64,000 bases of DNA from positions 159,038,691-159,102,690 of the forward strand of contig NC_052158.1 of NCBI RefSeq assembly GCF_902713615.1, in the 5' to 3' direction. The notes below the pieces were generated by a model. It searched no databases. It saw only the letters and a list, made by a program, of their open reading frames with translations, and was not told where the DNA came from. A program made the translations under genes and the position numbers. Of this stretch, positions 22,716 through 52,462 are shown piece by piece. The DNA comes from Scyliorhinus canicula. Taxonomy: Eukaryota. Numbering within the stretch: position 1 is the first letter of the stretch; each line of letters starts with the position of its first letter.

Positions 22716-22930
22716 ATGCGGTCGCTTGCTATTTGGACGCTTCTGTTCCTCCTCTCACTCACGAAGTTGAGTTTAGAAATTCAACCTACGTGCAAGCAGC
22801 GGGAAAGGTTCAATTCCGGAGTCTCTCAAAATGGAGATATTGTTCTGGGTGGTTTATTTCCAATACATTTCGGAACAACGCCAGATGAGAACACATTTCG
22901 TTCTAAACCTCAGCCAATGCGCTGCTTTCT
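22716..22930 (+). CDS. V2R/OlfC-like gene B, exon 1
   Basis: MRSLAIWTLLFLLSL signal peptide, GDIVLGGLFPIH; GTAAGT donor at 22931; 215 nt. Confidence 0.93.
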
Positions 22931-24094
22931 GTAAGTAAGCTCATCAGTCTGAATAGGATTGTTTTCCGAATACGATCAAAACTCCCTTTCTTAAATAACA
23001 CGCAATTCTTGAACCAGGGAAGCCATCATATTTAAATTTCGGTAGTTCTATAATCTGTCGACATGCTTGGGTTTCAGTGGGCGCATTCGAGTGGTCGAGC
23101 GCGATTGTTTCTGTACCATCAGGGAAATGGTTTTCGGCATTAGAAACAGAATGACATGAGGGCAGAATGTTACAGTTGTAAGGATTGCAATGGAAAGCCA
23201 AACTAGTACTTGGAGAGAAAGCCTACGTTAACTTTGTGCAATAAGACCAGAGATTTTTAAAGGATCATCAGATTCTTAGCGACTGAATGATGATGGAAAG
23301 TCCAGACCCAATGATTCACCTCTGCTTCTTCTGGGGTGTGTTTCCTAGTTGCTTCTGAGTATTTCTAACATTTTCCGTACTCATTTTTGAATCTAGGACA
23401 GCTATGTACTGTTAATGCTCTACATTGATATGCTCGTGTATTTACTTTCAAAGTCACTTGTCTTTAGATTTTCTCACTTGGGTTAGCTTTATCCTTTCCA
23501 CTTTATTTCACTGTTGGTTTCTTCTCGCCAGGAATACCTCTAGTTTGGAGAATAATGTAAGCAGATGACAACCTATCAGAAATTAGACAGACTTTCAACT
23601 TGGACCTAGAATAGAACAATCGAATTGGTCTCCTGCTCTCAGTGCCCAATTTCAATTCCCGTAACTTCGGGAGCCTAGAAATGGCAGCTGAGGCGGTTCC
23701 ATCCGTTTTGCGCTGCCGCCCATTAAACAAAATGCTTAAATTTTCCGTATGAATTCGGGTAACAGAATGTGGACGAAGCAAAAAACTAACAGAAGATTTT
23801 TTTCAAGCTAGATGTGTAACCTCTATGAAAATGAACTATGCTCCGCCTCAGAAAGGAGCAGAATATGGATATACAGTTTAATACATCCCGTACCGGCCTC
23901 CCCGAACAGGCGGCGGAATGTGGCGACTAGGGCCTTTTCACAGTAACTTCATTGAAGCCTACTTGTGACAATAAGTGATTATTATTATTATGAGTGAACA
24001 GATCCCATTTAAAGAATCGGTCAACATTTATAGTAAACTGCAGTCGTAAATTTGTTTTATTTTTACTGCAATGTTTTACTAGACGGCTAAAGAC

Positions 24095-24235
24095 CGACCT
24101 AAAATTGTAAAATATCAAAACACTGAAGATGCTGGAAATGTGCACTAAAATAATGGAAATGCTCAGCAGACCTGATAGGATCGATGGAGCGGTAATCAGA
24201 TTAAACGTATCGGGTCGATAGCCCTTCATCAGGCC
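24095..24235 (-). repeat. Old Penelope-type terminal repeat relic with a degenerate hammerhead (family 2)
   Basis: CTGATGAAGGG..CCCGATACGTT, then GTCTGCTGAGCATTTCCA; relatives at 26723-26840, 60140-60230, 62425-62520 and 63200-63300. Confidence 0.6.
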
Positions 24236-24299
24236 TTTAAAAAAAACAAGTTGGTTATAACGTGCTTCCACACTCAATATGCCAATGTTTATTTCATAG

Positions 24300-24591
24300 G
24301 CTCCGGCAAAGAGAGTTGCGCTGGGTCCAGACGATGATCTTCGCAATAGAAGAAATAAACAGGAATCCAAAGCTGCTTCCTAATGTAACATTGGGCTATA
24401 AGATATTTGACAGCTGCCATACACACTCCGATTCGCTGAAAGGAACCCTCAAACTACTGAACGAGGAGGATGAGACCGAATCCAGTTACAGATGTGCGGC
24501 CACTCCGATAGTACCCATCATTGTGGGAGATGCATCATCTTCACAGTCCATTGCCGCCTCACGTTTGTTGGCTCCCTTCAATATAGGCCTG
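24300..24591 (+). CDS. V2R/OlfC-like gene B, exon 2
   Basis: TAG acceptor, GTATGA donor; 292 nt; RWVQTMIFAIEEINRNPKLLPNVTLGYKIFDSC..IVGDASSSQS. Confidence 0.95.
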
Positions 24592-25177
24592 GTATGATTA
24601 ATTGATTACTTAACTTCATAGATTAAAGCACGTTGACTCAATGTCCCATGGGTGCAGAACAAGTGTATATTTAAATATGTGCCCCCAATCATCGACCAGA
24701 GGCATTTTCGGAACACCTGTTAGAGTGGCTGAGTTTGATTTATTCTGTATTGCCGGTAGCATTGTCGCTACAATATGCTACCGAAGCCATTCCTCGTCAC
24801 AAATCCTCATTTCATACAATCACACATTGCATAACAGCTCGTGATGTAAGAAATACAATCCAAACGCAATCGCGAGTAAAATACCGCAGGGGGGTTGATT
24901 TGTCAACGTTTCACGGGCCAATTTGATCTGATTTCTATGTAGCTCGGTGCTCCACATCGGCTGGGTCCGAAAACAAAATGCGGTTTGGAATGATACAAGC
25001 TGAGCGATATTGCCTTTGGGTCACTGTGTGAAACCAACGATGTTGGATCATATACCAATTTCTTTTTGAACGTGATCCTGCTTGCTTCTGACAAAGCATA
25101 TTTCCCCCAAATTTCTGTTATATGTCTGCTGATCATCGAGTTATTTGTCACCTTCCACTCTCCGGTTGCATTTCCTT

Positions 25178-25316
25178 TAATGAAATGAAAATCGCTTATT
25201 GTCACAAGTAGGCTTCAAATGAAGTTACTTTGAAAAGCCCGTAGTCGCCACATTCCGGCGCCTGTTCGGGGAGGCTGGTACGGGAATTGAACCGTGCTGC
25301 TGGCCTGCCTTGGTCT
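25178..25316 (-). mobile_element. Short tRNA-SINE, 5'-truncated, in intron 2 of gene B
   Basis: Near identical to 53972-54151. Confidence 0.85.
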
Positions 25317-25451
25317 ACTGTGAAAATTATAGTCCATGGCATTATGACTGGACCCAGATCAATACTTTAATTTCTCATTGATTAGTCCTAGGGTCCTGCT
25401 GGATGGCAAAATGTGTTTGCGCTATAATTAAAAACCTGTATTAAATTCTAG

Positions 25452-26282
25452 GTCAGCTATGCTTCGTCTTGTACCTGTCTGAGTGATAAGCGCGAATTCC
25501 CAACTTTCTTCAGGACAATTCCCAGTGACGGCGTTCAAGTCAAAGCGTTGGTGAAACTGGTGCAGCGCTTTAAATGGATTTGGGTTGGGATTGTAACAGA
25601 AGACAGTGAATATGGCCGATTTGCCATAATATCCTTTATTGAAGAAGTTTCTAAGTTCGAAACATGTATCGCCTTTATTGAGTTTATGTCTCCGGAAAGC
25701 ACCAGAATCAAATTGCTTGGGGTTATAGAGACTATTAAAAAGTCCACTGCTAAGGTGGTCATAATATTTTCTCTTGAGCATGCGACAAAGTCTTTAGCAA
25801 TAGAACTCAGGCGGCACAACATAACGGACATTCAGCTGATTGCAAGTGAAGCCTGGATCACATCTGTCAGATTATGGACTAAAGAAACACAGGAAATATT
25901 TTCTGGAACAATCGGATTTGGAATTCGGAGAGCGGAAATCCCAAGACTGAGGGAGTTTCTAGTCAAACTCCACCCTTCCAGAACACCAGACAATCCCTTT
26001 GTGGAAGAACTCTGGCGGGATGTTTTTGGGTGTCGCGTTAAATTCTCAAACCAGAGCCTAGAAAAAGAAACATCTCCTTACAAACCATGCACAGGTTTAG
26101 AAAGCTTGGAGACCATTCAAAATGCATACACCGATGTATCACAATTGCGAATTTCGCACAATGTGTACAAAGCAGTATATGCGATAGCTCACGCTCTTCA
26201 CAATTTAAAATCGTGCGAAAATGGGAAAGGCCCATTTATCAATATGACGTGCGGCCAAGGATCCCGCATTCTCCCCTGGCAG
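25452..26282 (+). CDS. V2R/OlfC-like gene B, exon 3 (main Venus flytrap exon)
   Basis: 831 nt in frame; VSYASSCTCLSDKREFPTFFRTIPSD..WIWVG..YG..ASEAW..VYKAVYAIAHALH..PWQ; GTGAGG donor. Confidence 0.96.
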
Positions 26283-26485
26283 GTGAGGAAAGATCTGCTT
26301 ATCCGTGCGACGCAAAATGTAGCCTTTGTTTCTTAGGATGGTTATTTAAAATGATTTTATTTAGAAATTAGAATCTCATAACTTTGTGATGTTTTAATTC
26401 GTGATTAAATAATTGATCAGACGTGTGGCGGACTTATGAACGACTTACAGTGCTGTAGAATGGAATTGTTTTTCTGTGTTTAAAG

Positions 26486-26713
26486 CTTTTACACTACCTG
26501 AAGGAAATCCGCTTCACAACCCAGTTTGGCGAGGAAGTGAGCTTCGATAAGAACGGAGATCCTGTTGCCTCCTATGACGTGATAAATTGGCAGCAGGGCG
26601 TTGATGGGTCGGTGCAGTTTGTTAACGTTGGATATTACGATGCAGCGTTGCCGGAAGGCGAAGAATTCGTGTTGAATGAAAGTAGAATTGTTTGGCATGG
26701 ATCCCAAAACAGG
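26486..26713 (+). CDS. V2R/OlfC-like gene B, exon 4
   Basis: 228 nt; LLHYLKEIRFTTQFGEEVSFDKNGDPVASYDVINWQ..VGYYD; AAG acceptor, GTAAGG donor. Confidence 0.95.
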
Positions 26714-27339
26714 GTAAGGATTTTGACAAAGAGTAATCCAGACTCGGCACGTGAGCTCCCTTCTCTCCACAGATGGAGTCAATCCTGCTCAGATTCTCCA
26801 ACAATTTCTGCTTTTATTAAGGACTTTTCTAATGATTGCAAAACCACATAATTTCACGATAAGTTGTCAATTTAATGTTTTCCCCTGCATGTGGCTATGA
26901 CTAAGACATGGCGGTCCATAAGATAGCACCTCAAACACGAGGCGCAACAATAGCGCACTGTGGGTGCAGAAAGCTCACAAGAGCTTTTCGGCAGCATCTC
27001 GCACATTTCGTGCAGAGGCGGGCAATGGCGGATAAAGCATGGGAAACCCATCACCACCAAGTTCACTTCCAAGTCACTCCCTAGCGTTGCTTGAAGATTT
27101 CTCGCTATTCCTTCATGGATGGTAAGTAAAAATAGTTTAAGTTCCTCATTCAAAAGTATTTTGGGAGCACACGTATTGAAAGGGTTGACGAAGAAAGCGC
27201 ATCAATATCTTCTCAGTGATCATGGATAACTACCGTCCTTCCTCGCAAACCTCACACCCTGGATGATTAGTGTGTACATTCCACAGTGAAGCTCCTTTAT
27301 CTTGAAAGTTTGTTTACGACTTGTTATTCGTTTGATAAA

Positions 27340-28870
27340 GAAGCGGAAATTAATGGACTAGAGTAAGCTTCCAGGGAACATAAAAACTGACTGAAAGTTT
27401 CTATAGGTGTGTGAAGATAAAAAGATTGGTGAGTTCAAACGTAGGTACCTTTCAGTCAGGAACAGGGGAATATATAATAGGGAACAAAGAAATGTCGGAG
27501 GAACTGAACATATATTTTGGTTCAGTTTTCACAAAAGAGGACACAATTCAGATACCAGAACTGTTGGGGTACGCAGAGTTTAGTGAGGTGGGGGGGGGGG
27601 GCTGAAGGAGATTGATGTTATTAGAGAAATGTTGTTGCGGAAGTTGATTGGATTGAAACTTACAAATATCCAGGGCCTGGTAATCTACGTCCCAGAGAAC
27701 TTAAGGAAGTGGGTCCAGAAATGATGGGTTCATTGGTGGCCATCTTCTGGGAGTCATAGAATCATTCTTTGATGATATAACTAGTAGAAGGGGAGCCTGT
27801 GGATGTGGCTTTTGACAAGGTCCCGCATCAGAGATTAGCGTGTAAAATTAAAGTGCCTGCTATTAGGGGTAGTGAATTTCGATGGATAGAAAACTATTTG
27901 GGGACAGGAAACAAAGATTAGGAATAAATAGTTATTTTTCAAATTGTCATCCAGTGACTAGTGAGGTACCACAGAGATTGGTGCTAGGTCCCCAGCTATT
28001 CACAATAAATATTAATGATTTAGATGAGGGAACAAAATGCAAAATCCCCAAATTTGCATATGACATCAGGTCGGGTGGCAAAGTGAGCTGTGAGGAGCAT
28101 GCAGAGATTCTTCAATGGGAATTGGATACGTTGAAAGTGAGTGGGCAAAGGAATGGTAGATGCAGTATAATTTGGATAAACGTGAAGTCATCCACTTTGG
28201 TAACAAAAACGAGAAGGCAGACTATTATCGGAATGGCCATAAGTTAGGAGAGGGGAATGTACAACGAGACCTCGGTGTTACCACACATCAGTTACTGAAG
28301 GTGAGCAGACAGATACAGCAGGCAGTAAAGAAGGCACATTTCTTACTGTCCTTCATTGCGAGATGATCCGAAAACAGGATGGAGGGTCACTTGCTGCAAC
28401 TATATCGGGCCATGGTGAGGTCACACCTGGAATATTCGGTGCTGTTTTGATATTGTTACCTAGAGGGAGTGCAGCAAAGATTTTCCAGACTCTTTCCTGG
28501 GATGGCGGGACTGGCGTATCAGGGGAGATTGAATCGGGTAGGATTGTATTTGCTGGAGTTCAGAAGAATGAGGAGTAATCTCGTAGAAACCTAGAACATT
28601 CTAACAGAACTAGAAGTTCAGGGTTCAGGTGAAGTCTCTTTACCAAGAGAGTCGTGAGCCTGTGGAATTCGTTACCACAGGAAGTAGGTGAGGGCAAAAT
28701 AGTGCATTGTCTTAAATAAGCAGTTAAACTTACCACATAGGGCGAAGTGGATCAAAGTATATGGGGGAATCAGTATTTGGTTAATGCATTGAATGACCAG
28801 CCTTTATCATAATGAATGGCCGAAGGGCCGCATGGATCGGCCGACTCCTATTTTCTACGTTTCTATGTTA
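27340..28870 (+). mobile_element. Decayed CR1 LINE in intron 4 of gene B
   Basis: AFDKVPH, VLGPQLFTININDL..KFAYD, REVIHFGNKN motifs. Confidence 0.88.
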
Positions 28871-29054
28871 CTTGCAACTCCAGTCATTCCACAGATATGT
28901 TGATCGACAAACGCTCTAGACCTTATAAAGGTTGAATAAGCAATGCAAACGAGATGCTCTGAGCGTAAAATTAATGAATCCAATATTCCTGACATATTAA
29001 GGGAAGGTTTTAAATGCAGGCTGTTTTTCAGAGTGGATTTTGCAATCTCCACAG

Positions 29055-29178
29055 GTACCAATATCAATATGCAGTGGCATTTGTCCAGTGGGAACACGAA
29101 AGGGCGCTCGAAAAGGGCAACCAATCTGTTGCTTTGACTGTTTGCCATGTTCTGAAGGAGAGATTAGCAATCAAACAG
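29055..29178 (+). CDS. V2R/OlfC-like gene B, exon 5 (cysteine-rich NCD3G domain)
   Basis: 124 nt; [41 protein letters not shown]; CAG acceptor, GTAGAC donor; this frame is absent from the ORF track. Confidence 0.95.
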
Positions 29179-29311: not shown

Positions 29312-30219
29312 ATTCTTCAGAATGTACCAAATGCCCCAGAGATTACTGGTCCAACAAGGCAAGAAATCAATGCATTCCAAAAGAGATTGAGTTCCTCTCC
29401 TTCCACTCCACCATGGGAATAGCACTCGTAGCAATTTCACTGTTTGGAGCTTGTATCACAGGAGTTGTTGCAGCTGTTTTCTTATATTTCCTAAACACTC
29501 CCATTGTAAGGGCCAACAATTCGGAGCTAAGTTTCCTTCTGTTAATCTCATTAATACTCTGCTTTTTGTGCTCCATTGCATTCATTGGGCAGCCAACACC
29601 ATGGTCATGTATGGTGCGCCACACTGTGTTTGGGGTGAGCTTTGTTCTGTGCATTTCCTGTATTCTCAGCAAAACTCTGGTCGTCCTGATGGCATTTAAA
29701 GCAACGCTCCCGGCCAGTAATGTGATGAAATGGTTTGGACCCAAACAACAAAGATCAATCGTCTTCCTCTGCACATTGATTCAAATTATAATATGTGTGA
29801 TCTGGTTGGTGACATCTCCCCCTCTCCCATCTAAAAACACCAAGTATCAAAGTGCAAAGATTATCCTTGAGTGTGATGTGGGTTCCACAGTTGCTTTCTG
29901 CTGTGTGTTCGGTTACATCGGACTCTTAGCGGGTATATGTTTACTTTTAGCCTTCTTGGCCCGGGCCTTACCGGACAAGTACAACGAAGCTAAATTTATT
30001 ACCTTCAGCATGCTGATCTTTTTTGCAGTTTGGGTAACTTTCATCCCAGCCTACATAAGCACTCCCGGAAAATACACGGTGGCCGTGGAAATATTCGCAA
30101 TCTTGGCATCGAGTTTCGGATTACTGAGCTGCATCTTTGCTCCAAAATGTTACATTGTCTTACTCAGACCAGAGGAGAACACGAGGAAGCAGATCACGAG
30201 TAGAAGAGGAAAATTATAG
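29312..30219 (+). CDS. V2R/OlfC-like gene B, exon 6 (7tm_3 transmembrane domain, stop codon)
   Basis: 908 nt; [59 protein letters not shown]; spliced CDS totals 2598 nt. Confidence 0.97.
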
Positions 30220-30579
30220 ATTCATAGATGACTATCGTACTAAAGGAAGCCAGACGTCCATCGCACTTATGCTAGATAAAGAAGTCAACAGGATTTTGTT
30301 TTTAATTGAATGATGATTTGAAATTATGAGAAATTTTACGACACTGAGGAAGTAAATTGGTTTTCCTTTCAGATACACAATCGTTGTTCTAGTCGATTGT
30401 AGTAGTAGCAATCTAGGATGGAATGCAACACAGCGCAAGGCTGGAACCATTGGTCTGAGGAACACTTTTTGTTGATTTAAATGCTGAACATATTTATTAA
30501 TAATAAGAAACTGATACTCGATAAATGTCTCTTTTCGTCTTTTAATGGACACTTGGTATGAATATATGTACAAAACGAC

Positions 30580-31110
30580 ATACGAATTAGGCACGGGGTA
30601 CACCAAAAGGCCCTTCGAGCCTTCTCCACCATTCAATAAGATCATGGCTGGTATGATTTTTAAAAATAAATTTAGAGTATCCAATTGAGGGGAAATTTAG
30701 CACGTCCAATCGGCCTACCCTGCACATCTTTGGGTTTTGGGGGTGAAACCCACGCAACCATGGTGGGGATGTGCAAAATCCACAGGAACAGTGACCCAGG
30801 ATCGAACCTGGGACTTCGGCGCCATGAAGTCGCAATGCTAACCACTGCATGACCGTGCTGCCGTTTGGTTGGTAAGATTTTCACCTCAACTCTACATTCC
30901 TGCCGAAACCCAATGATCAGTCACCACCTTGCTTATCAAGAACCTATTCACCTCCTCCTTCAAATTTTCAAATATTCTGTCTCCACCCTCCTTTGAGGAA
31001 CAGTGCCAAAGGCTAAGAACCCACTGAGAGAGAAAATATTCTCCCCATCTCTGTCTTAAATTGGCGACCTTTTTTTAAAGCAGTGACCTCTCGTTCGAGA
31101 TTCAAGAGGA
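30580..31110 (-). mobile_element. CR1 3' fragment with an inserted V-SINE (30662-30863)
   Basis: CR1 tail and a V-domain SINE flanked by the near-TSD GGTA(T/A)GATTTT. Confidence 0.75.
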
Positions 31111-33192
31111 AACATAAGAACATAAGAACTAGGAGCAGGAGTAGGCCATCTGGCCCCTCGAGCCTGCTCCACCATTCAACGAGAGCATGGCTGATCTTTT
31201 GTGGACTCAGCTCCACTTTCCGGCACGAACACCATGACTTTTAATCCTTTATTCTACAAAACACTATCTATCTTTATCTTAAAAACATTTAATGAAGAAG
31301 CCTCAACTGCTTCACTGGGCAAGGAATTCCATAGATTCACAACCCTTTGGGTGAAGAAGTTCCTCCTAATCTCAGTCCTAAATCTACTTCCCCTTATTTT
31401 GAGGCTATGCCCCCTAGTTCTGCTTTCACCCGCCAGTGGAAACAACCTGCCCGCATCTATCCTATCTATTCCCTTCATAATTTTATATGTTTCTAGAAGA
31501 TCCCCACTCATCCTTCTAAATTCCAACGACTACAGTCCCAGGCTATTCGACATGTCCTCGTAATCCAACCCCTTCAGCTCTGGGATTAATCTAGTGAATC
31601 TCTTCTGCACACCCTCCAGTGCCAGTACGTCCTTTTTCAAGTAAGGATACCAAAACTGAACACAATACTCCAGGTGTGGCCTCACTAACACCTTATACAA
31701 TTGCAGCATAACCTCCCTAGTCTTAAACTCCATCCCTCTAGCAATGAAGGACAACATTCCATTTGCCTTCTTAATCACCTGTTTCACCTGTAAACCTGCT
31801 TTCTGTGACTCACGCACTAGCACATCCAGGTCTCTCTGCACAGCAGCATGCTGTAATATTTTATCGTTTAAATAATAATCCCGTTTGCTGTTATTCCTAC
31901 CAAAATGTATAACCTCACATTTTTCAACATTGGATTCCATCTGCCAGACCCTAGCCCATTCATTAACCTGTCCAAATCCATCTGCAGACTTCCAGTATCC
32001 TCTGCACATTTCGCTTTACCACTCATCTTAATGTCATCTGCAAACTTGGACACATTGCCCTTGGTCCCCAACTCCAAATCATCTATATAAATTGAGAACA
32101 ATTGTGGACCCAACACGGATCCCTGAGGGACACCACTAGCTACTTATTTCCAACCAGAGAAACACCCATTTATCCCCACTCTTTGCTTTCTATTAATTAA
32201 CCAATCCTCTATCCATGCTACTACTTTACCCTTAATGCTATGCATCTTTATCTTCTGCAGCAACCTTTTGTGTGGCACCTTGTCAAAGGCTTTCTGGAAA
32301 TCCAGATATGCCACATCCATTGGCTCCCCGTTATCTACTATACTGGTAATGTCCTCAAAAAATTCCACTAAATTAGTTAGGCACGACCTGCCCTTTATGA
32401 ACCCATACTGCGTCTGCCCAATGGGACAATTTCTATCAAGGTGCCTCGCTAGTTCTTCCTTGATGATAGATTCCAGCATCTTCACTACTACCGAAGTTAA
32501 GCTCACTGACCTATAATTACCCGCTCTCTGCCTACCTCATTTTTAAACAGTGGTGTCACGTTTGCTAATTTCCAATCCACCGAGCCCACCCCAGAGTCTA
32601 GCGAATTTTGGTAAATCGTCACTCGTGCATCTGCAATTTTCCTAGCCATCTCTTTTAGCACTCTGGGGTGCATTCCATCAGGGCCAGGAGACTTGACTAC
32701 CTTTAGCCCCATTAGCTTGTCCATCACTACCTCCTTAGTGATAACAATCCTCTCAAGGTCCTCACCTGTCGCAGCCTCATTTCTATCAGTCACTGGCATG
32801 TTATTTATGTCTTCCACTGTGAAGACCAACCCAAAAAACCCGTTCAGTTCCTCAGCAATCTCCTCATCTCCCATTATTAAAACTCCCTTCTCATCCTCTA
32901 AAGGACCAATATTTAGCTTAGCCACTCTCTTTTGTTTTATATATCTGTAAAAACTTTTACTGTCTGTTTTTATATTCTGAGCAAGTTTACTCTCATACTC
33001 TATCTTACTCTTCTTTATAGCTTTTTTAGTAGCTTTCTGTTCCCCCCTAAAGATTTCCCGGTCCTGTAGTCTCCCACAAATCTTTGCCACTTTGTATGCT
33101 TTTTCCTTCAATTTGATACTCTCCCTTATTTCCTTAGATATCCATGGTGGAATTTCCCTCTTTCTACCGTCCTTCCTTTTTGTTGGTATAAA
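31111..33192 (-). mobile_element. CR1-type LINE ORF2 (RT to 3' end), few frameshifts
   Basis: KSPGPDGMHPRVLKE, QYGFIKGRSCLTNL, YLDFQKAFDKVPH, SKFADD, LVRPHLEYCVQFW; (TTCTTATG)n tail. Confidence 0.95.
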
Positions 33193-33732
33193 CCTTCGCT
33201 GCCCAGGCATCCTGGTGGTCGCAATCCACATGGAACAGGATGTACTGCTCCGCGTGTGCATATCGGTTGTCCATGATGGCGTGGATGCACTTATGTGGCG
33301 ATGCCTGCGTGATCCCGGACAGTTCCCCACTCAGTGACTGGAACAAACCCCTCGAATAAAAGTTCAGGGAAACCATAACCTTGACAGTCAACAGAAGCGG
33401 GTGTCCTCCCCATACCCGTGTGGTGCCAGCCCCTCTGCTCATCCGCAATCTCCGCCTGCATGCCAGGTGCGGCAGGTCCTGGAATGACATGCGGTCCCTC
33501 ATGTAGCGCTATCATCCACCTCCTCCTCCTCCTCGGCCAGTTGGGTGGCCGGCCCTCCAGCCTCTGCGTCCTCCACCTGCCACTCTGCAGCGTGCTCCTG
33601 TGCTGAAGATTAACCCTCCTCTCCAAGGAGCACCCGCCCATGCTGCTGCAAAGGATCTTGCAGAGTGCGGCCATCACCACAGCGGCCAGCATGATGGTTT
33701 GGTGTCCGAATGCCATTCATGCAGGGGGTGAA
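33193..33732 (-). mobile_element. Harbinger transposase 5' fragment; continues the minus-strand copy at 37231-37530
   Basis: MAFGHQ.., SFQDLP..CRRRLRMS, GGHPL..VKV..LNFY..G.FQ..GITQ, homologous to 38395-38930. Confidence 0.8.
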
Positions 33733-33800
33733 AGAATAAAGAACAAAGAAAATTACAGTAAGAAGTCTTACAACACCAGGTTAAAGTCCAACAGGTTTGT

Positions 33801-33846
33801 TTCAAACTCTAGCTTTCGGAGCACTTGCTCCTTCCTCAGGTGAATG
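33801..33846 (-). ncRNA. Minimal type I hammerhead ribozyme motif in a Penelope pLTR
   Basis: TTCAC-CTGAGGA-A-GGAGC(AAGT)GCTCC-GAAAGCTA: both core boxes, a 5-bp stem II, palindromic AGCT stem III. Confidence 0.72.
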
Positions 33847-35464
33847 AAGAGGTATGTTCCAGAAACATATATATAGACAAATTCAAAGATGCCAGACAAT
33901 GCTTAGAATCCGAGCATTTGCAGGTAATTAAATCTTTACAGATCCAGAGGTAGGGGCAACTCCAGGTTAAAGAGGTATGAATTGTCTCAAGCCAGGACAG
34001 TTGGTAGGATTTCGCAAGCCCAGGCCAGATGGTGGGGAATGAATGTAATGTGACATGAATCCCAGGTCCCGGTGCAGCCGCACTCATGTGTGTGGAACTT
34101 GGCTATAAGTTTCTGCACAGCGATTCTGCATTGTCGCGCGTCCTGAAGGCCATCTTGGAGGACGCTTACCCGGAGATCAGAGGCTGAATGCCCTTGACTG
34201 CTGAAGTGTTCCCCGACTAGAAGGGAACATTCCTGCCTGGTGATTGTTGCGCAATGTCCGTTCATTCATTGTAGCAGCGTCTGCATGGTCTCGCCAATGT
34301 ATCACACTTCAGGACATCCTTTCCTGCAGCGTATGAGGTAGACAACATTGGCCGAGTCGCGCGAGTATATACCGCGTACCTGGTGGGTGGTGCTCTCACG
34401 TGTAACGGTGGTATCCATGTCGATGATCTGACATGTCTTGCAGAGATTGCCATGGCAGGGTTGTGTAGTGTTGTGGTCTCTGTTCTGAATGCTGGGTAGT
34501 TTGCTGCAAACAATGGTTTGTTTGAGGTTGCGCGGTTGTTTGAAGGCAAATAGTGGGGTGTGGGGATGACCTTGGCAAGATGTTCATCTTCATCGATGAT
34601 GCGTTGAAGGCTGTGAAGGAGATGTTGTAGTTTCTCGGCTCCGAGAAAGTACAGAACGACAAAGGGTACTCTGTCGGTTGTGTCCCGTGTTTGTCTTCTG
34701 AGGAGGTCGGTGCGGTTTTTTGCTGTGGCAACGTTGGAACTGTTGATCGATTAGTCGCGCACCATTTGCCGTTCGAACAAGGGTATAAGGGTATCTTTCA
34801 GCGTCTGTAGATGTCCGTTGCGCTCCTCCTCATCTGAGCAGATCCTGTGTTTCCGGAGGGCTTAACTATGGGGGGGGGGGGGTGGCTTCTTTAATGTGTT
34901 TCGGGTGGAAGCTGGAGAAGTGGAGCATCGTGAGGTTATCCATGGGCTTGCGGTAAAGCAAAGTGCTGAGGTGACCGTCCTTCATGGAGACGAGTGTGTC
35001 CAAGACTGCAACTAATTTTGGAGAGTAGTCCATGGTGAGTCTAATAGTGGTATGGAACTTATTGATGTCATCGTGTAGTCTTTTCAATGATTCTTCGCCG
35101 TGGGTCCAAAGGAAGAAAATATCATCGATGTATCTGACGTGTAACGTCGGTTGAAGGTCTTGTGTGGTGAGGAGGTCTTGTTCAAACTTGTGCATGAAGA
35201 TGTTGGCATATTGAGGTGCGAATTTGGCCCCCATGGCTGTTCCGTGCGTCTGGATGAAGAATTTGTTGTTGAACGTGAAGACATTGTGATCCAGAATGAA
35301 GCGGATGAGTTGCAGAATTGTGTCTGGAGGTTGGCAGTTGTCGGTGTTGAAGACTGAGGCTGTTGCAGCAATGCCGTCGTCATCGGGAATGCTAGTGTAG
35401 AGTGCCGAGAACTTCATTGGGCGAGGAATGTTATTGGTTCAACTGATCGGTGGGGACTCAGTTT

Positions 35465-35650
35465 ACATAGAACATAGAACAGTACAGCACAGAACAGGCC
35501 CTTCGGCCCTCAATGTTGTGCCGAGCCATGATCACCCTACTCAAACCCACGTATCCACCCTATACCCTTAACCCAACAACCCCCCCCCCCTTAACCTTAC
35601 TTTTATTAGGACACTATGGGCAATTTAGCATGGCCAATCCACCTAACCCG
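35465..35650 (-). mobile_element. 5'-truncated V-SINE inserted in the Penelope RT
   Basis: Matches 41769-41955; 6-bp TSD CAGTTT (35459-35464 and 35651-35656). Confidence 0.85.
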
Positions 35651-36683
35651 CAGTTTCTGCAGCAAGTCCGTCGTGTTGCGACAGAAGCTGGGTGTACCTT
35701 GTACGATGGGTTTCAAGATGCCCTCGATGTAGCCAGACAGGTTCTCACACAGGTTCCCATTGCCTGAAAGGATAGGACGGCCTGGTGTGTTGGCCTTGTG
35801 TATTTTCGGGAGGCAGTAGGGATCTCCAATGCGGGGAGCACGTGGGATGAGAGCACGTAGGGTGCTCTGAAGGTCTGGATCCAAGGTCTTGATCAGTCTA
35901 TTGAGTTGGCGGATGTGTTCCTTGTCGGAACTGCGGGTAACTATCTGTAGTGTTCTTGGTTGTTGAGTTGTCGGTATACTGCTTTGCTGTAGTCCCAGCA
36001 CCAAAATGGACAGTTACCGGAATATGAACCTCAAACAAACCAATGTTTGCAGCAAACTACCCAGCCTTCAGAACAGAGACCACGACACCACACAACACTA
36101 CCATGGCAATCTCTGCAGGATGTGCCAGATCATCGACATGGATACCACTATTACAAGTGAGAACACCACCCACCAGGTACGCGGTACATACTCGTGTGAC
36201 TCGGCCAATGTTGTCTACCTCATATGCTGCAGGAAAGGTTGTCCCGAAGCGTGGTACATTGGCGAGTCCATGCAGATGCTGCGACAACGAATGAACGGAC
36301 ATTGTGCGACAATCACCTGGCAGGAATGTTCCCTTCCAGTCGGGAACACTTCAGCAGTTAAGGGCATTCAGCCTCTGATCTCCGGGTAAGCGTTCTCCAA
36401 GGTGGCCTTTAGGATGCGCGACAACGTAGAATCGCTGAGCAGAAACTTATAGCCAAGTTCCACACACATAAGTGCAGCCTGAACTGGGACCTGGGATTCA
36501 TGTCGCATTACAATCATCCCCGACCAACTGTCCTGGCTTGAGACAATAAACACCTCTTTAACCTGGGGTTATCCCTTTCTCTGGATCTGTGAAGATTTAA
36601 TTACCTGCAAATGCTCGGATTCTTAGCATTGTCTGGCATCTTGGAATTTGTATTTTTATATGTTTCTGGAACATACCTCTTCA

Positions 36684-36722
36684 TTCATCTGAGGAAGGGG
36701 CGGTGCTCCGAAAGCTAGGGTT
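36684..36722 (+). ncRNA. Minimal type I hammerhead ribozyme motif in the inverted Penelope pLTR
   Basis: CTGAGGA (36689)-A-GGGGC(GGT)GCTCC-GAAAGCTA. Confidence 0.68.
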
Positions 36723-36805
36723 TGAAACAAACCTGTTGGACTTTAACCTGGTGTTGTAAGACTCCTGACTGTCGTCACCCCAGTCCAACGCCGGCATCTC
36801 CACAT

Positions 36806-37230
36806 CAAAGAAAATTACAGCACAGGGACAGGCCCTTCAGCCCTCCCAGCCTGCACCGATCCAGATCCTTTGTCTAAACTTGTCTCCTATTTTCCAAGGA
36901 CCTACTTCCCTCTGTTTCCCGCCCGTTCATATGCATGTCTAGATGCATCTTAAATGATGCTATCGTGCCGGCGTCTACCACCTCCACTGGCAAAGCGTTC
37001 CAGGCACCCACCACCCTCTGCATAATAAACTTTCCACGCACACCTCCCTAAAACATTCCCCCTCTCACCTTGAAATCGTGACTCCTTGTAATTGACACCC
37101 CCACTCTTGGAAAAAGCTTGTTGCTATCCACCATGTCCATACCTCTCACAATTCTGTCGACCTCAATCAGGTCCCCCAACAATCTCCGTCTTTCCAATGA
37201 AAACAATCCTAATCTACTCAACCTTTCTTC
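36806..37230 (-). mobile_element. CR1 3' fragment; its tail is displaced to 33731-33758 by the Penelope insertion
   Basis: EERLSRLGLFSLERRRL.GDLIEV, RSHDFKVRG. Confidence 0.88.
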
Positions 37231-37530
37231 AGGTTGAAAGGCCAACATGTTAGCATTGCGTATACACACGTGCCCAGCCAGGTTCTGTGGGCTACATGGT
37301 GGCCCCGGCTGCGGGCATGTCCCTCCCCCACCCACACCTATGCCCTGTCGGTATCAGGCCCTGTTGGTGCACACGATCCTGGCGCCTGTCCCTGCTGCCA
37401 CGAGAACCGTTGGCTGGTGCCAGCGGAGTTCACATATTTGGACTCTCCACTGTCGGGATTCTCCCGTGCGTCGGAAGCCCGGGGATTTGCCAATGGCAAG
37501 CGAGACGGAGAATCCCAGGCGCGGGCCGCA
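37231..37530 (-). mobile_element. Left end of a minus-strand Harbinger copy
   Basis: 37234-37320 is the inverted homolog of 38294-38380; GGAGAATCCC terminal-type motif at 37507. Confidence 0.7.
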
Positions 37531-37540
37531 CCAGAAATCT

Positions 37541-40500
37541 GGGGCTGGATTCTCCATTTGGCAACGCCAAATTGTGAAATATGATTGGTCGGAGAGTATC
37601 ATCCGACACCAAAATCTTGGTAAATCCCGGTTTGAATCCAAATTGGGATGCTTCGGCACCCCCAAAATGGCGTAAATGCAGCGCTCGCTGGGCGGACTGT
37701 AAGTACAGTAAGACTATAATTAGCGGGCCTGACATCCGATGCTCCCGGGCATCTGCGATTCACCGACTCTGATGGGCCGAGTTCCTGATGGCGTGGTTCA
37801 ATTGCGGTTGTAAAATTCGTGAACCAGTCGTCCTGGCTGTTAAGCGAGAGAGAGGAGATAGAAAATGGCATGGACTGACTGTGGGCTCCCGGCTCGGACA
37901 CTTGGGTGGGGGGGGGGGGCTCTGCCAGGGGAAGGGTAATGGGGGCAGTGGGAGGGCGGGCCCAGCCGTCCACCCCCCCCTCTCCCACAGGACCCAGGCA
38001 TTAACCACCATTATGGTGGCCATCTTGCTGGCCACACAGTCTGGCCCCTGTTTCTACAACGTGACACCGGCCTTATTGTGCGCCTACCCTTGCCCCCGAA
38101 TACACTGCCGAACCAGCATCCACCCACATGGGGGACCACTCAGGGCCGCACCAACGACAGAACCTAGTGACAGCAGTGATAGCCAACAGTGCCCCTGGCA
38201 GCAGGGATGGGTGCCAAGACCGGCGTTTCAGATGGGGCCGCATACCGCTGGGGCAGGTGTGGAGAGGTTGGGGTGTGGACATGCATGATTGGAGCCCGCA
38301 GTGCCAACCGGGGCCACCATGTAGCCCATGGTATCTGGAAAGGCACTTGAGTATGCGCCATGCTAACATGTTGGCCTTCCACCTCCTGCAGAGAATGGCT
38401 TTCAGACACCAGCCCGTGATACTGGCTACCGTGGCGACGGCCGCAGCCCTGCGAGAAACCCTACGGCCAACTGAGCAAAGGCCATTCAGAGAGGAAGCAG
38501 AGGCTGCAACAGAGGAATGGGCTTCAGGGGGCAGTGGCCGCTGCAAGGCTGGAGGGCCGGCTGCCCAACAGGTTGAGGAGGAGGAGGAGGTGCCCCGCAC
38601 ATACCGCAACCACATGTTGTTTGAAGACCTGCCAGACCGGGCATGTAGGTGGAGTCTACAGATGAGCAGAGAGACAGTGCAACATATATGCCAGATGATG
38701 GCAAACCTGGCACCGCTTGGGGTATGGCGGTGGACACCCCCTCCCAGTGACTGTCAAGGTGACGGTCATGCCCAACTTTTCTGCCATGGGGTTGTTCCAG
38801 TTGCCGAGTGGTGACTTTTCTGGGATCTCACAGACAATGGCGCACAGGTTCATCCATGCCATCACGGAGGCCCTTCATGACAGGCACAGCAGTACATACA
38901 GTGCCATGTGGACCACATCTCCCAGGATGCCTGGGCAGCGTCGTTCGCTGCTATTGCCATGATGCCTCGAGTCCAGGGGCGATTAATGTCATGCATATTG
39001 CGCTACAATCACCTGTGGATGACAGGCCGCTCTACACAAACAGCAAGGGCTACCACACTATGAACGTTCAGCTGGTGTGCGTATCTACGTGCAGTACCCG
39101 GGCTGCATGCACCATGGATTCATACTGGCACACTCAATGATCCCCAGCATGTTTGAGGGGTTGGCTGCTTGGAGACAGGGGTTACCCATTTCAGTCCTGG
39201 CTGATGACGCCTATCCAGGGGCCACAGACCGACATGGAGACCCACTATAACAATCCCCATACAGCGGGGTGGGGAGCACAGCCCCCACCCTCTACTCCCA
39301 CTGGCCAGCACTGACAGACTCACACCCACACCTATCAGACAGAGCACGGAGGTAGGTTTGAACGGTATTAACAGATTTTATTGTGAACAAATGCATACAG
39401 TCTGTGCCGAACCCCTATAACTAAACGGTGTCCTGCACCCCTACCAACTTAACTGGTGTCTAACATTCAGGCCTTACGGGCCCCAATACTACGTAGGTAG
39501 TTACCCAGGCGGTACAGCAGGAGTGGAGGCGGCCTTCTCTGATTCCTGTCCTGTGACAAGGACCCTGGTTGGCACACGTCTCCTGGGGCAACCCGGCCTG
39601 GATGGGACCGGCTGCTCCCCGGGTGTCCCGGGTGGAATCATGCTGCCCTGTTCTGCCGCTGCCCACCAGATGCACCAAGGATAGGAGGGGCAATCAGAGG
39701 TGCTGCGCTGTTCCAGCACCTCTACTGCGGAGGTCACCGGCACGGGCCCCATCACCTCCTCCTCCCCAGGGGTACCCGATGGTCCCTGGGCTACACCATG
39801 GGATGGGGGTGCATGCAGAGCCGTCCCCTGAGGCTGCCTTGCTCCCTGCGTGCCAGTCCTGGAGTGCCGTTTTGGACTCGACCAGTGTATGCACGTTCGA
39901 GGCCACGGAGCACAAGGAGTGGACCATCTCTGTCTGGGACTCTGCCACCACCCTGAGGGTCCGTGTCACATCAGCCAGTGACTGGGCCAAATCCTTCTGA
40001 GAGTGTGCCGCCTCCCACAGGGACTGGGTCCCGTCCCTCTGAGACTGTGCTGCCTCCCACTGGGTTTGGGCCACCTGCCTCTAGGACTGGGACACCTCCC
40101 CCTGGGTCTGGGTCACGCCCCTCTGGCTGGGCCACTTCCCTCTGGGTCTGTGTCGCGTTCCTCTGGGGCTCGGTCACACTGCCCAGTGCTTGTGGCACGC
40201 AGTCCAATGCCTGGGCAATGCTGCTTATGCTCTCAGCTATGGCCTGTTGTGACTGTGCCACGCTGAGGAGCGCCGCTGCAATGTCAAGGTGGCTCTGGCA
40301 CATGGCTGGATACCGGACCCCGCCTGCGCCAAATGTCCCAGGATTTGCTGACTCTGACCCAAATCTGACACCTTCGCTCCCGTCGCCTCCACTGAGGATG
40401 CCACCGAGGTGCGGTGTCGGCCTGGGTGGCAGGCATAACTGGCACCACACGCTGCTCCTGCACATGGATGGACTCCTCCAACTGCGCCTTCAGGTGCTGG

Positions 40501-40969
40501 AAGCCAGCCGACGTACTCTCCTCTTGTCCCTGGGTCTCTGACTGCAACTCCACTGTGGGTGGGACTGGATGTTCCAGGAGCCCGGGACCTGTCTGGGCGG
40601 CAGCTGGTTCCTCGGGCTTGCCTGCCCTCCGACTGTCTGGCCCTCGGCTGCTCCTACCTCCACGTGCTGTACCGGATACGATGTATGGTGTGCATCAGAT
40701 AGTGTCCCTGGACCCTCTACACTGAAGTACCCAGCACCTTAGTCTCTGGGATGGTGGAGCATGTAGGGGACAGCTGTGACGGAAAGTCTGTATCCTCCTC
40801 CGACCCGAAATCCGGGGTCACCTGAAGCTCGGACAATGCGCTGGTGTTCAGGCTGCTCTCCCCATCAGTGCTCGACAGAATGGGGGGGCAACGGCTCTGG
40901 CATTGGCTGGGGGCTTCAGATGGTCTGGCCCCATCTCTGGCTGGTCCTGTAAGACACAATACGACATCC
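37541..40969 (+). mobile_element. PIF/Harbinger DNA transposon: decayed HARBI1-like transposase (+) and a convergent second ORF (-)
   Basis: Begins GGGGCTGGATTCTCC; 38395-39260 frameshifted LPVTVKV..NF..G.FQ..GISQ, GAINVMHI, YTNSKGYHTMNVQLVC, WLLGDRGYP..WLMTP; minus-strand low-complexity, heptad-like ORF 39500-40950. Confidence 0.85.
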
Positions 40970-41574
40970 TGCTATGGGCCAGGGTTTAAAGAACCCCAAA
41001 CTGTATCATGGAGTTCACCTGACCCATAGCGTTTACTAGATTGTGGTATGGGGAGCACACGGACCACTCTCCAGGTGTGGTACAGCAGAAATGGAAAAGT
41101 ATTTTTTAAAGCAAAACAATGTTTATTCTATGAACTCAAGATAAAACAGACTTTACAAAACATACAGTGAACATCTTAGCAACCATTAATTGAAATACAA
41201 CCCCCAACTAATACAACACTAAGTAATCGTTAAGCTGTCCTTTTAACATCCATAAGACTTTTAAAAGAACTTTTAACAGAAGCACATCAGGTTAAAGTCA
41301 CTACTGAGAGCAGTTATTAGTTTTAAATCACCAAAGGATCGATTTACAGTTTTTAGACATCAGAGAGAGAGACCAATACCCTTTCTGTCTGTGACTGCAG
41401 ATATCCAGCTCTGAAAAGGAAACTAAAACACACCCTGCAGCAAACAGCCTAAAACGAAAGTGGAAAGCTGACAGACAGTTCAGCTCAACCACACTCTGAC
41501 ATCACTGATAAACACCTATTTCTTAAAGGTACGTTTCTTAAACACCCATTTCTTAAAGGTACTCTTACGTGACA
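40970..41574 (-). mobile_element. 3' LTR (605 bp) of a Gypsy/Gmr1-type element
   Basis: TG...CA ends; polypurine tract (minus strand GGGGGGAGG, 41575-41583) directly precedes TGTCACG. Confidence 0.8.
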
Positions 41575-43677
41575 CCTCCCCCCACGAAAAATAACATGAA
41601 TTTCAAGATGGTTTCATGTTTCACTTTACACTATCCTTTATGAAATGCACACAGTAAATATACATTTTAATTTCAAAAAAACAACACACGCAAACAGTTA
41701 TAATAATAAGTCCATTTTATTTTTGCTCTTCTTCCTCCAACTGAAACTGCTTCTGTTCATCGCATTCGAATAGAACAGTACAGCACAGAACAGGCCCTTT
41801 GGCCCTCAATGTTGTGCCGAGCCATGATCATCCAACTCAAACCCACGTATCCACCCTATACCAATAACCCAACAACCCCCCCCCCCCCCCCCTTAACCTT
41901 ACTTTTATTAGGACACTACGGGAAATTTAGCATGGCCAATCCACCTAACCCGCACATCTTTGGACTGTGGGAGGAAACCGGAGCACCCGGAGGAAACCCA
42001 CGCACACAGGGGGAGGACGTGCAGACTCCACACAGACAGTGACCCAGCCGGGAATCGAACCTGGGACCCTGGAGCTGTGAAGCATTTATGCTAACCACCA
42101 TGCTACCCTGCTGCCCTTATGCTAACCACCATGCTACCCTGATGCTTTGTCACATTCGTGACAAAGCATCAGCTATCACGTTTTTTCGTCCTGCCACATG
42201 TACTATTTTTAAATATAATGGCTGTAACAATAAACTCCAGCGAAACCGCCTTGTATTGTTATTCCGGAATCGCTCGAAAAACATCAACAGATTATGATCA
42301 GTATATATAATGGTGTCAGACGGATTGCTGATCACATAAATGTAAAAATGTTGCAAAGCTAGCAACAAACTCAACATCTTCTTCTCAGCTGTTGATTACT
42401 TCTTCTGGTGAGAATTCAATTCATTTGAAAAATAACCAATAGGCCGCTCTAGCTCTTCATCGTCATCTTGTAGAAGCAGCGCATCTACACCCACATCACT
42501 CGCATCAACCGCCACTTTGAATGGTTTCATATAATTTGCGATGGCTAATGCAGGAACAATGGTTAACACAGCCTTTAGGCCGTCAAATGCCTGTTGACAC
42601 TCTGCTGTCCACTGGGATTTGTTACGCTTCTGGAGCAAGTCCGTCAGTGGAGCAACCACACTGCTGAAATTCGGTACAAATTTCCCGTAAAATCCACTCA
42701 TACCAAGAAATCGCATTATTTCCCGTCGTGTCGAGGGTATCCCCAATAACTTTTGTTTTCACATCCCGTGGGACCGTTCGACCCCGTCCGATTGCATGGC
42801 CAAGGAAAGTGACTTGGGCTTTTCCACTCTCACTTTTGGCTAGGTTTATCACGAAACCCGCCTCCTGAAGTCGATTGAATAACTCGATCAGACGTTTCAA
42901 ATGTTTGATCGTCGATGTATACCGCACAATTAGGTCATCCTGAAACTACTTTGTTCGTTAACCGTTGAAATGTGGCTGGGGCGCTTTTCATGCCAAATGG
43001 CATAACTTGAATTGGTATATACCAGTAGGGGTCACATAATCTGAAATATCCTTCGCCCTTTCGGATAAAGGTACCTGCCAGTAACCTTTAAGTAAATCCA
43101 GTTTGGAAATAAAAGCTGATTGTCCCACTATCTCAATGCAATCCTCCAAACGTGGGTTTGGATAAGAGTCCATTCTTGTAACTGCATTAACCTTTCTATC
43201 ATCCACACACAACCGCTGGGTCCTCTTACCTCATGACCAAAAATTAGTTTAAAATGACTGAATTTGGTTGACTCATTAGGTGCATCCCTAATTGCAAACA
43301 GTAAGAATGGAATTCCTTTATCCCAATCCTCTGGATATTCTTGACAATAAGCCCTCAACATTGTCTTTAGTGTCTGGTGCCACATTTCTAACGCTCCCTG
43401 CGATATTTGATGGCACGCAGTTGATTTAAATTGTTTTATTCCTAAGCTATCCATAACTTCTTTGAGTAACCTTGACGTAAAATTTGATCGTTGATCCAAT
43501 TGTATTTCTGTGGGTAGTCCATATCGAGAAAATAATTGAAGTAACTCCTCCACAATCTTTTTAGCAGTAATATTACGTACTGGAATGACCTCTGGAAACC
43601 TAGTAGACACATCCATTATAGTCAAAAGATATTGATTCCCACTTTTCGTTTTAGGAAACAGTCCTACGCAATCAAGT
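41575..43677 (-). mobile_element. Gmr1-type Gypsy pol remnant (integrase-RT-RNase H order)
   Basis: DCVG..PK..GNQYLLTIMDVSTRFPE..QLDQRSNFTS integrase (43220-43677); KLDLLKGYWQVPL and YIDD RT; FLGMSGFY, VDASDVG, YTDHN, NVIADALSR RNase H. Confidence 0.9.
41769..42141 (-). mobile_element. Full V-SINE with a duplicated 5' end
   Basis: Matches 4219-4560; 25-bp direct repeat at 42086-42110 and 42117-42141. Confidence 0.9.
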
Positions 43678-44030
43678 GGGGCAGCACGGTAGCATTGTGG
43701 ATAGCACATATGCTCACAGCTCCAGGGTCCCAGGCTCGATTCCGGCTTGGGTCACTGTCTGTGCGGAGTTTGCACATCCTCCCCATGTGTGCATGGATTT
43801 CCTCTGGGTGCTCCGGTTTCCTCCCACAGTCCAAACATGTGCAGGTTAGGTGGATTGGCCATGATAAATTGCCCTTACTGTCCACAATTGACTTTAGTGT
43901 TGGGTGCGGTTACTGGGTTATGGGGATAGGGTGGGGGTGTTGACCTTGGGTAGGGTGCTCTTTCCAAGAGCCGGTGCAGACTGGATGGACCAAATGGCCT
44001 CCTTCTGCACTGTAAATTCTATGACATCTA
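43678..44030 (+). mobile_element. Full V-SINE
   Basis: Nearly identical to 6473-6825. Confidence 0.9.
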
Positions 44031-52400: not shown

Positions 52401-52462
52401 CAATAAAAATAAAGTAAAAAAACACTGTTACTTTTGAAGCCACTTATGCTTTTCTGGTTGCA

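What the first reader, a model, noticed from the sequence alone, without database searches (positions are those of the whole stretch)
29434..29900. Probable gene-conversion tract between transmembrane exons of convergent genes B and C
Seen: B 29434-29900 and the reverse complement of C 53024-53490 align without gaps over 467 nt with about 14 mismatches by hand count (about 97%), and only 1 mismatch in the last 225 nt or so, including synonymous sites. Identity drops abruptly on both sides within the same exon (after VAF-C/W many third positions differ), and the ectodomain exons are far more diverged. The genes form an inverted repeat about 23 kb apart. Inference: recent, possibly layered, ectopic conversion homogenising TM1 to the start of TM5 while the ligand-binding domains diverge. 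The tract could also mediate inversion of the spacer, swapping C-termini.
Basis: partly seen in the sequence, partly recalled or inferred. Interest (0 to 1): 0.7.

Follow-up and report, generated by a model that had tools for sequence, protein, structure and literature searches.

The report
Shark smell-receptor genes share a copied core
Two neighbouring catshark smell-receptor (V2R) genes carry a sharply bounded, almost identical 467-base stretch coding for the membrane core, because related genes repeatedly copy this stretch onto each other (gene conversion); it is a clean new example of a known process.

Summary
B 29434-29900 and the reverse complement of C 53024-53490 align without gaps, with 14 mismatches in 467 nt. 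The last 177 nt are identical.

Both stretches lie in the last (7TM) exons of two intact, convergent V2R/OlfC genes of the small-spotted catshark. Synonymous divergence (dS) is 0.00 in 29671-29898, 0.20 in 29434-29670 and about 0.8 in the flanks of the same exon. Permutation tests give p<5e-5.

Constraint alone does not explain this:
- A more distant elasmobranch differs by about 8% in the tract.
- A derived synonymous letter (T at 29823) is shared by B and C, while the laid contigs of the two other species that cover it read A.

The B/C pair is one case of something wider. Four V2R lineages (A-D) predate the shark-ray split. Their ectodomains and exon flanks follow orthology. The tract (residues 41-195 of the exon, TM1 to the start of TM5) instead groups by genus, and AU tests reject each alternative.

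Best reading: recurrent interlocus gene conversion, a bounded island of concerted evolution.

Still open:
- There is no sign that the inverted repeat has inverted the spacer.
- No read spanning the whole tract was available to exclude an assembly effect.

This scan reported a similar 7TM-core conversion in catshark PAR genes, on other DNA.

The parts
29434..29900 (+). Homogenised tract in the last exon of V2R gene B (codes residues 41-195 of the exon: mid-TM1 to the first residues of TM5)
   Evidence: 14/467 mismatches to C. Third-position maximum chi-square segment is 29434-29898. TM mapping comes from hydropathy and a gapless alignment to CaSR.
53024..53490 (-). The matching tract in the last exon of V2R gene C (C position = 82924 minus B position)
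29671..29900 (+). Youngest layer: 1 difference in 230 nt, 0 of about 52 synonymous sites differ. It holds the shared derived synonymous T at 29823.
   Evidence: dS 0.00. At 29823, T is read in B, in C and in the single contig of the second S. canicula sample that covers it. A is read in organism B (1 contig) and organism D (6 contigs).
29434..29670 (+). Older or patchy layer: 13 differences, dS 0.20, dN 0.017
   Evidence: By outgroup contigs, the letters of B at 29566, 29589, 29598, 29667 and 29670 are private and derived. The A of C at 29523 is absent from the other two species.
29312..30219 (+). Last exon of gene B (end of the Cys-rich linker, 7TM domain, C-tail, stop codon)
   Evidence: Acceptor at 29310-29311 and ORF to 30219. 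Pfam 7tm_3 E = 1e-83. The RefSeq S. canicula protein P0463 matches residues 1-292 of the exon exactly.
52705..53612 (-). Last exon of gene C
   Evidence: Pfam 7tm_3 E = 6e-86. The RefSeq protein P0459 is identical over the exon.
22716..29177 (+). Gene B exons 1-5 (about 22716-22931, 24301-24594, 25452-26303, 26483-26716, 29034-29177): ligand-binding ectodomain and Cys-rich domain, not homogenised
   Evidence: tblastn of fish and shark V2Rs. ANF_receptor hit. Exon 3 is 71% identical to C at the nucleotide level.
53757..63719 (-). Gene C exons 1-5 (about 63719-63522, 60610-60308, 59236-58370, 58199-57957, 53891-53757)
30220..52704 (.). 22.5-kb spacer between the convergent genes, rich in repeats. 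It would be inverted by a crossover within the tract.
   Evidence: Self-BLAST shows only dispersed repeats here. No test of inversion was possible.

Best explanation
B and C are intact, convergent V2R/OlfC class C chemoreceptor genes. They belong to two paralogue lineages that separated before sharks and rays diverged.

The middle of their last exon (mid-TM1 to the start of TM5) is kept nearly identical by recurrent non-crossover interlocus gene conversion among the clustered paralogues (A, B, C-types, D). The ectodomain exons, the linker/TM1 start and TM5-TM7 plus the tail keep each lineage's own sequence.

Shown:
- the sharply bounded low-dS tract;
- a derived synonymous state shared by the paralogues;
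- genus-wise rather than orthologue-wise grouping of the tract.

Inferred:
- The last event covering 29671-29900 post-dates the split of S. canicula from S. torazame, and 29434-29670 is an older or patchily repaired layer.
- The island persists because extreme protein constraint keeps the copies similar enough for heteroduplex formation, so conversion there is harmless. At the edges, conversion is either blocked by about 20% divergence or removed by selection for lineage-specific flanks.
For: 1. dS is 0.00 (29671-29898), 0.20 (29434-29670), 0.53 (5' flank) and 0.89 (3' flank).
2. Constraint test. Contigs of organism D differ from B by 7-9% inside the tract (12/132, 11/148, 10/128) and by about 15% outside. 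Contigs of organism B, whose 5' piece encodes the residues of the S. torazame B protein P0303 at the five places where it differs from B there, show seven listed differences in the tract. So silent sites in the tract do change over time.
3. At 29823 (third position of a Pro codon), T is read in B, in C and in the contig of an independent S. canicula sample. A is read in both other species.
4. The ectodomain tree resolves four orthogroups that follow the species tree, and group B includes rays.
5. The tract tree puts all 11 Scyliorhinus proteins of groups A-D in one clade (98/94). Orthogroup labels are no better than random there: 18 changes against a shuffled mean of 17.6.
6. AU tests reject orthogroup clades on the tract (p 0.001-0.01). 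They reject a Scyliorhinus clade on the flanks (p 1e-7), where orthogroups return (4 changes, minimum 3).
7. Scyliorhinus versus Mustelus: all 5-6 genus-specific columns lie in residues 41-195, and all 16-17 orthogroup-specific columns lie outside (p 4e-5).
Against: - No nucleotide sequence of the other paralogues or orthologues could be fetched. The family-wide claim therefore rests on protein alignments, with few variable columns, and on unphased short contigs.
- Read laying hid 80 rows of differences, so the polarity of 8 of the 14 sites is unknown.
- No read or contig spans the whole tract with unique sequence on both sides.
- GC3 is not raised in the tract (0.43-0.46 against 0.45-0.54), so there is no biased-conversion footprint.
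- Strong protein constraint alone explains the low dN, and part of the lack of paralogue-specific columns.
Confidence: 0.85

Rival explanations
1. No conversion. The tract is frozen by selection on the nucleotide sequence itself (codon use, RNA structure, a regulatory element inside the exon), so old paralogues still look alike.
For: The tract is the most conserved protein segment: 84-99% identical among all paralogues and species compared and about 70% identical to bony-fish OlfC. Contigs of organism B differ very little from B in 29635-29873 (3/239).
Against: - Organism D differs by about 8% in the tract while the protein is nearly unchanged, so silent sites are free to change.
- B and C lineages are older than that species split, yet differ at 0 of about 52 silent sites in 29671-29898.
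- A derived silent letter is shared at 29823.
- Genus-specific residues are shared by four paralogue lineages.
- A pseudo-exon relic at 9274-9414 is only 76% identical to C within the tract.
Confidence: 0.05
2. Assembly or polishing artefact. Short reads of one copy were used to correct the other, creating false identity.
For: No read spanning the whole tract could be examined. In the independent sample X1, three of B's private letters (29589, 29667, 29670) were not seen.
Against: - The tract is not a perfect copy. Its 14 differences are mostly silent, and both genes keep open frames.
- The tract edges coincide with the family-wide edges seen in independently assembled genomes of S. torazame and Mustelus asterias.
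- In a second S. canicula sample, a 332-nt contig covers 29599-29930 with 3 differences, and B's 3' end (30054-30280) is reproduced exactly.
- S. torazame contigs show the same near-identity.
Confidence: 0.04
3. Parallel adaptive amino-acid change. All paralogues of a genus independently acquired the same residues to fit a genus-specific partner, without any DNA exchange.
For: The family-wide evidence is at the protein level. A shared partner (G protein, co-receptor, chaperone) is conceivable.
Against: - It cannot give identical silent sites between B and C or the shared silent T at 29823.
- It needs 4-6 parallel changes in each of four lineages, in at least two genera.
- Several of the changes are conservative swaps in loops and helices (V/A, T/S, L/V).
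Confidence: 0.04
4. A single recent event with patchy mismatch repair, rather than layered or recurrent conversion, produced the whole 467-nt tract in this pair only.
For: Both outer edges are abrupt, and the 13 retained differences all lie in the 5' half.
Against: - At least five of those differences are private derived letters of B, not ancestral B/C differences: the other species carry the C-like letter.
- The same tract is homogenised in other paralogues and in other genera.
Confidence: 0.1

Closest known systems
Interlocus gene conversion among OlfC/V2R genes of bony fish (GENECONV tracts in channel catfish OlfC subfamily 9; PMC6588630)
   Same: Same receptor family and same process: paralogues within a species are more alike than orthologues.
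   Different: There it was reported among recently expanded copies and was used mainly to filter data. Here it is confined to a fixed part of one exon. It acts between lineages older than the shark-ray split, between inverted genes 23 kb apart, and recurs in several shark genera. The shark V2R papers held in the library (PMC6368271, PMC10116579, PMC9018814) do not contain the phrase 'gene conversion'.
Domain-restricted conversion between GPCR paralogues, such as CCR2/CCR5 (PMC8877049), and the catshark PAR paralogues noted by this scan (s1-216898)
   Same: The seven-helix core is homogenised while the parts that define specificity stay distinct. Events are repeated and independent in different lineages.
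   Different: Those are class A receptors in tandem orientation. I did not re-examine either case here.
Concerted evolution limited by divergence thresholds (theory of conversion ceasing once paralogues diverge; general knowledge, e.g. Walsh 1987, Teshima and Innan 2004, recalled from memory)
   Same: An island of continuing conversion is bounded by flanks too diverged to pair.
   Different: Whether divergence or selection sets the edges here is not tested.

Membership tests
V2R/OlfC (class C GPCR chemoreceptor) | 7tm_3 seven-helix domain | tested here: met
   Pfam PF00003, E = 1e-83 (B) and 6e-86 (C). Gapless alignment to CaSR structures, E = 5e-98.
V2R/OlfC (class C GPCR chemoreceptor) | Venus-flytrap ligand-binding domain (ANF_receptor) plus Cys-rich NCD3G domain, in a six-exon gene | tested here: met
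   ANF_receptor on exons 2-3. Six exons mapped. NCD3G (PF07562) is precomputed for P0294 and P0303, the representatives of the 90% clusters that hold the RefSeq products of C and B (P0459, P0463).
V2R/OlfC (class C GPCR chemoreceptor) | Expression in olfactory sensory neurons | not tested
   Literature only: most catshark v2r genes are enriched in a 'brain and olfactory epithelium' sample (PMC11979771). B and C were not mapped to the named genes.
Interlocus gene conversion / concerted evolution | A segment of much higher identity and lower dS than the flanks of the same exon, with sharp edges | tested here: met
Interlocus gene conversion / concerted evolution | Tree of the segment conflicts with the tree of the flanks (paralogues group by species) | tested here: met
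   Protein trees and AU tests. Column partition. Not done at the DNA level.
Interlocus gene conversion / concerted evolution | Derived substitutions shared by paralogues of one species | tested here: met
   Silent T at 29823. Scyliorhinus V51, T95, S173 and Mustelus S134, V173, E177 across groups A-D.
Interlocus gene conversion / concerted evolution | Silent-site constraint excluded by orthologue comparison | tested here: met
   About 8% divergence of the tract in organism D. Based on unphased contigs.
Interlocus gene conversion / concerted evolution | Both copies confirmed by reads spanning the tract | tested here: inconclusive
   Only short Logan contigs were available. None bridges unique sequence on both sides.
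NAHR inversion between inverted repeats | Inverted spacer or exchanged distal gene parts in some lineage or individual | tested here: not met
   The exon flanks of B and C, 5' and 3' together, group with their own orthologues. In the 3' flank alone, B is 96.7% identical to S. torazame B and C is 97.8% identical to C2. Polymorphism was not testable.

The most novel reading that the evidence does not exclude
The tract is a long-lived, sharply bounded conversion island. Four V2R lineages that split before sharks and rays diverged have shared one common TM1-TM4/ECL2 'chassis' by conversion, independently in Scyliorhinus, Mustelus and probably Heptranchias. The same edges (residues about 41 and 195) have been held for over a hundred million years, by selection for lineage-specific TM5-TM7/tail and linker. 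If so, shark V2R trees and birth-death counts that use the 7TM exon are partly distorted.
Probability: 0.3. Interest if true: 0.6.

Novelty: new member of a known kind. Interest (0 to 1): 0.45.

Why it matters
[quoted passage not shown] Their evolution has been described by gene trees and by counts of duplications and losses (PMC10116579 infers 94 duplications and 121 losses). A part of the 7TM exon that evolves in concert erases orthology signal and can mimic species-specific expansions, so tree-based inference should exclude or partition it.

It also marks which part of the receptor is interchangeable among paralogues (TM1-TM4 and ECL2) and which parts are kept lineage-specific (linker, TM5-TM7, tail). 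That gives a testable modular map for chimeric-receptor experiments.

The process itself is textbook, and it has already been reported for fish OlfC genes.

Tried and rejected
- Fetching DNA of the shark paralogues and orthologues (P0303, P0294, P0456) failed: 'sample's file is too large'. GENECONV/RDP and dS windows on all cluster paralogues could therefore not be run.
- The first protein search, with the exon alone, found only bony-fish proteins of at most 71% identity, because full-length shark proteins fall outside the length window.
- The representative search gave no close shark entry.
- Profiles built from exon fragments were mis-aligned by MAFFT and were discarded before A6 worked.
- My first all-site maximum chi-square scan picked 29364-30113, because the very divergent C-tail dominated it. 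I relied on the third-position scan instead.
- GC-biased conversion: there is no GC3 excess in the tract.
- Contig depths (organism B 43.6 against about 11; X1 21.8 against about 7-9) hint at 3-4 identical copies. The tool warns that depth is not copy number, so I did not use it as evidence.
- Inversion and swapped C-termini: no sign was found.
- One codon of the organism B contig (29431-29433) reads V where P0303 has A. I left this as possible polymorphism.

Full report
**What is there.** The window carries three class C chemoreceptor genes.
- Gene A is on the minus strand. Only exons 1-2 are present (about 5021-4845 and 2648-2343).
- Gene B is on the plus strand, with six exons between 22716 and 30219.
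- Gene C is on the minus strand, with six exons between 63719 and 52705.

Pfam finds ANF_receptor on the large ectodomain exons and 7tm_3 on the last exons. The closest solved structure is the calcium-sensing receptor, which aligns without gaps. The RefSeq Scyliorhinus canicula proteins P0463 and P0459 match B and C: the 7TM exon of C is identical, and that of B is identical up to residue 292. So these are two annotated, intact V2R/OlfC genes of the small-spotted catshark, lying tail to tail.

**The observation.** B 29434-29900 and the reverse complement of C 53024-53490 align gaplessly with 14 mismatches in 467 nt, and the last 177 nt are identical. The whole last exons align without gaps at 89.7%. 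Similarity begins at the splice acceptor and ends just after the stop codon. Identity is 78-79% on both sides of the tract within the same exon.

Nei-Gojobori estimates:

| Region | dS |
|---|---|
| 5' flank | 0.53 |
| 29434-29670 | 0.20 |
| 29671-29898 | 0.00 (0 of about 52 silent sites) |
| 3' flank | 0.89 |

Three tests show this is not chance:
- A two-breakpoint scan on third codon positions selects exactly 29434-29898 (chi-square 38.6, against a maximum of 19.5 in 500 permutations).
- The 177-nt identical run, and the 76-codon run of identical third positions, exceed all 20,000 permutations.
- Third-position differences are 9/155 inside and 50/146 outside (p = 2e-10).

By hydropathy and by the CaSR alignment, the tract runs from the middle of TM1 to the first residues of TM5.

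**Constraint or conversion?** I laid contigs of four public runs on 29250-30280.
- *Organism B.* Its 5' contig runs through B's intron. At the five places where the S. torazame B protein P0303 differs from B in that stretch, the contig encodes the P0303 residue. It shows at least 12 differences before 29434, and seven listed differences in the tract. Five of these (29566, 29589, 29598, 29667, 29670) carry the letter that C has, so those letters of B are private and derived.
- *Organism D.* This more distant elasmobranch differs from B by 7-9% inside the tract (12/132, 11/148, 10/128) and by about 15% beyond it. The protein barely changes, so silent sites in the tract are free to change.
- *Position 29823.* This is a third position of a proline codon. 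B, C and the contig of an independent S. canicula sample read T. Organism B reads A in the one contig that covers it, and organism D reads A in six contigs. This is a derived silent state shared by the two paralogues.

The B and C lineages are far older than these species splits (next section). Identity of their silent sites therefore needs DNA exchange. A lone pseudo-exon relic at 9274-9414 is only 76% identical to C inside the tract.

**The pair is part of a wider pattern.** A profile built from the window's exons (A6) reached full-length shark V2Rs. A second search and the cluster listing added the S. canicula and S. torazame copies.
- The ectodomain tree resolves four well-supported orthogroups (A, B, C, D), each following the species tree. 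Group B includes rays, so the duplications predate the shark-ray split.
- On the tract (155 columns), all 11 Scyliorhinus proteins of groups A-D form one clade (98/94) and the four Mustelus proteins lie together. Orthogroup labels need 18 changes, no better than shuffled labels at 17.6.
- AU tests reject each orthogroup clade of Scyliorhinus plus Mustelus on the tract (p 0.001-0.01).
- On the flanks of the same exon (146 columns), orthogroups return (4 changes, minimum 3), and a Scyliorhinus clade is rejected (p 1e-7).
- Column by column, Scyliorhinus against Mustelus gives 5-6 genus-specific columns, all within residues 41-195. It gives 16-17 orthogroup-specific columns, all outside that range (p 4e-5). 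Other genus pairs show the same partition.

The family-wide edges therefore coincide with the edges of the B/C nucleotide tract.

**Mechanism.**
- *Shown:* a bounded tract with silent-site identity, shared derived states, and tree conflict. This is the signature of interlocus gene conversion and concerted evolution.
- *Inferred:* because B and C are inverted, the events are non-crossover conversions, and a crossover would invert the 22.5-kb spacer.
- *Inferred:* the 29671-29900 layer post-dates the S. canicula/S. torazame split. The 29434-29670 layer is older, or was later altered by private mutations or small conversions from third copies.
- *Inferred:* the island persists because very strong protein constraint keeps the copies similar enough to pair. 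The edges are set by about 20% divergence, by selection for lineage-specific flanks, or by both.
- *Not resolved:* whether B and C exchanged directly or were both converted by A, D or the other C-type copies.

**Weaknesses.**
- No DNA of the other copies could be fetched, so the family-wide claim is at the protein level and rests on few variable columns.
- The contig table was truncated (80 rows hidden).
- No read spans the tract with unique sequence on both sides, so a polishing artefact is unlikely but not formally excluded.
- In the second S. canicula sample, three private letters of B were not seen. This could be polymorphism or a coverage gap.

**Comparison with what is known, and verdict.** Gene conversion among OlfC genes has been reported in catfish (PMC6588630), and it is well known in other chemoreceptor families. 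The shark V2R papers in the library do not contain the phrase 'gene conversion'. This scan found a similar 7TM-core conversion in catshark PAR genes on other DNA (s1-216898, not re-tested).

It is a new, unusually clean and long-lived example of a known process. The inversion idea has no support.

Noticed in passing
window 29404-29433: Just upstream of the tract, S. canicula B differs from the organism B (S. torazame-like) orthologous contig at 8 sites within 28 nt. At five of them the other species carries the letter that C has. This may be a small private replacement or micro-conversion patch in B.
   Followed up: partly
window 9274-9440 (-): Lone 46-residue relic of a V2R 7TM exon, matching the TM2-TM3 part of the tract. 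It is 76% identical to C at the nucleotide level and lies between genes A and B with no other exons nearby.
   Followed up: partly
window 2343-5021 (-): Exons 1-2 of a third V2R gene (A), head to head with B. The rest lies beyond the window start. Its RefSeq product (P0332) has a 7TM tract 96.8% identical to that of B at the protein level.
   Followed up: partly
outside the window (proteins P0459, P0294, P0458 against P0460, P0457, P0461): The three C-type copies of S. canicula group together, apart from the three of S. torazame, even in the exon flanks and weakly in the ectodomain. This is either independent triplications or whole-gene concerted evolution among the C-type copies.
   Followed up: partly
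window 29434-29577 (run X1, record 2): A contig of a second S. canicula sample differs from B at 3 sites, including 29469, which is not a B/C difference. It lacks most C-specific letters. It is either a third near-identical copy or a different allele.
   Followed up: no
window 30190-30219: The RefSeq B protein (P0463, 871 aa) departs from the window's open frame after residue 292 of the last exon, and ends with a longer tail resembling the C-type tail (HLMG...). This suggests an annotated alternative 3' splice.
   Followed up: no
window 33755-34529 and 36027-36772: A 0.78-kb inverted repeat (87.5% identical) lies in the B-C spacer. Other readers of this scan noted Penelope-type ends with hammerhead motifs here.
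   Followed up: no
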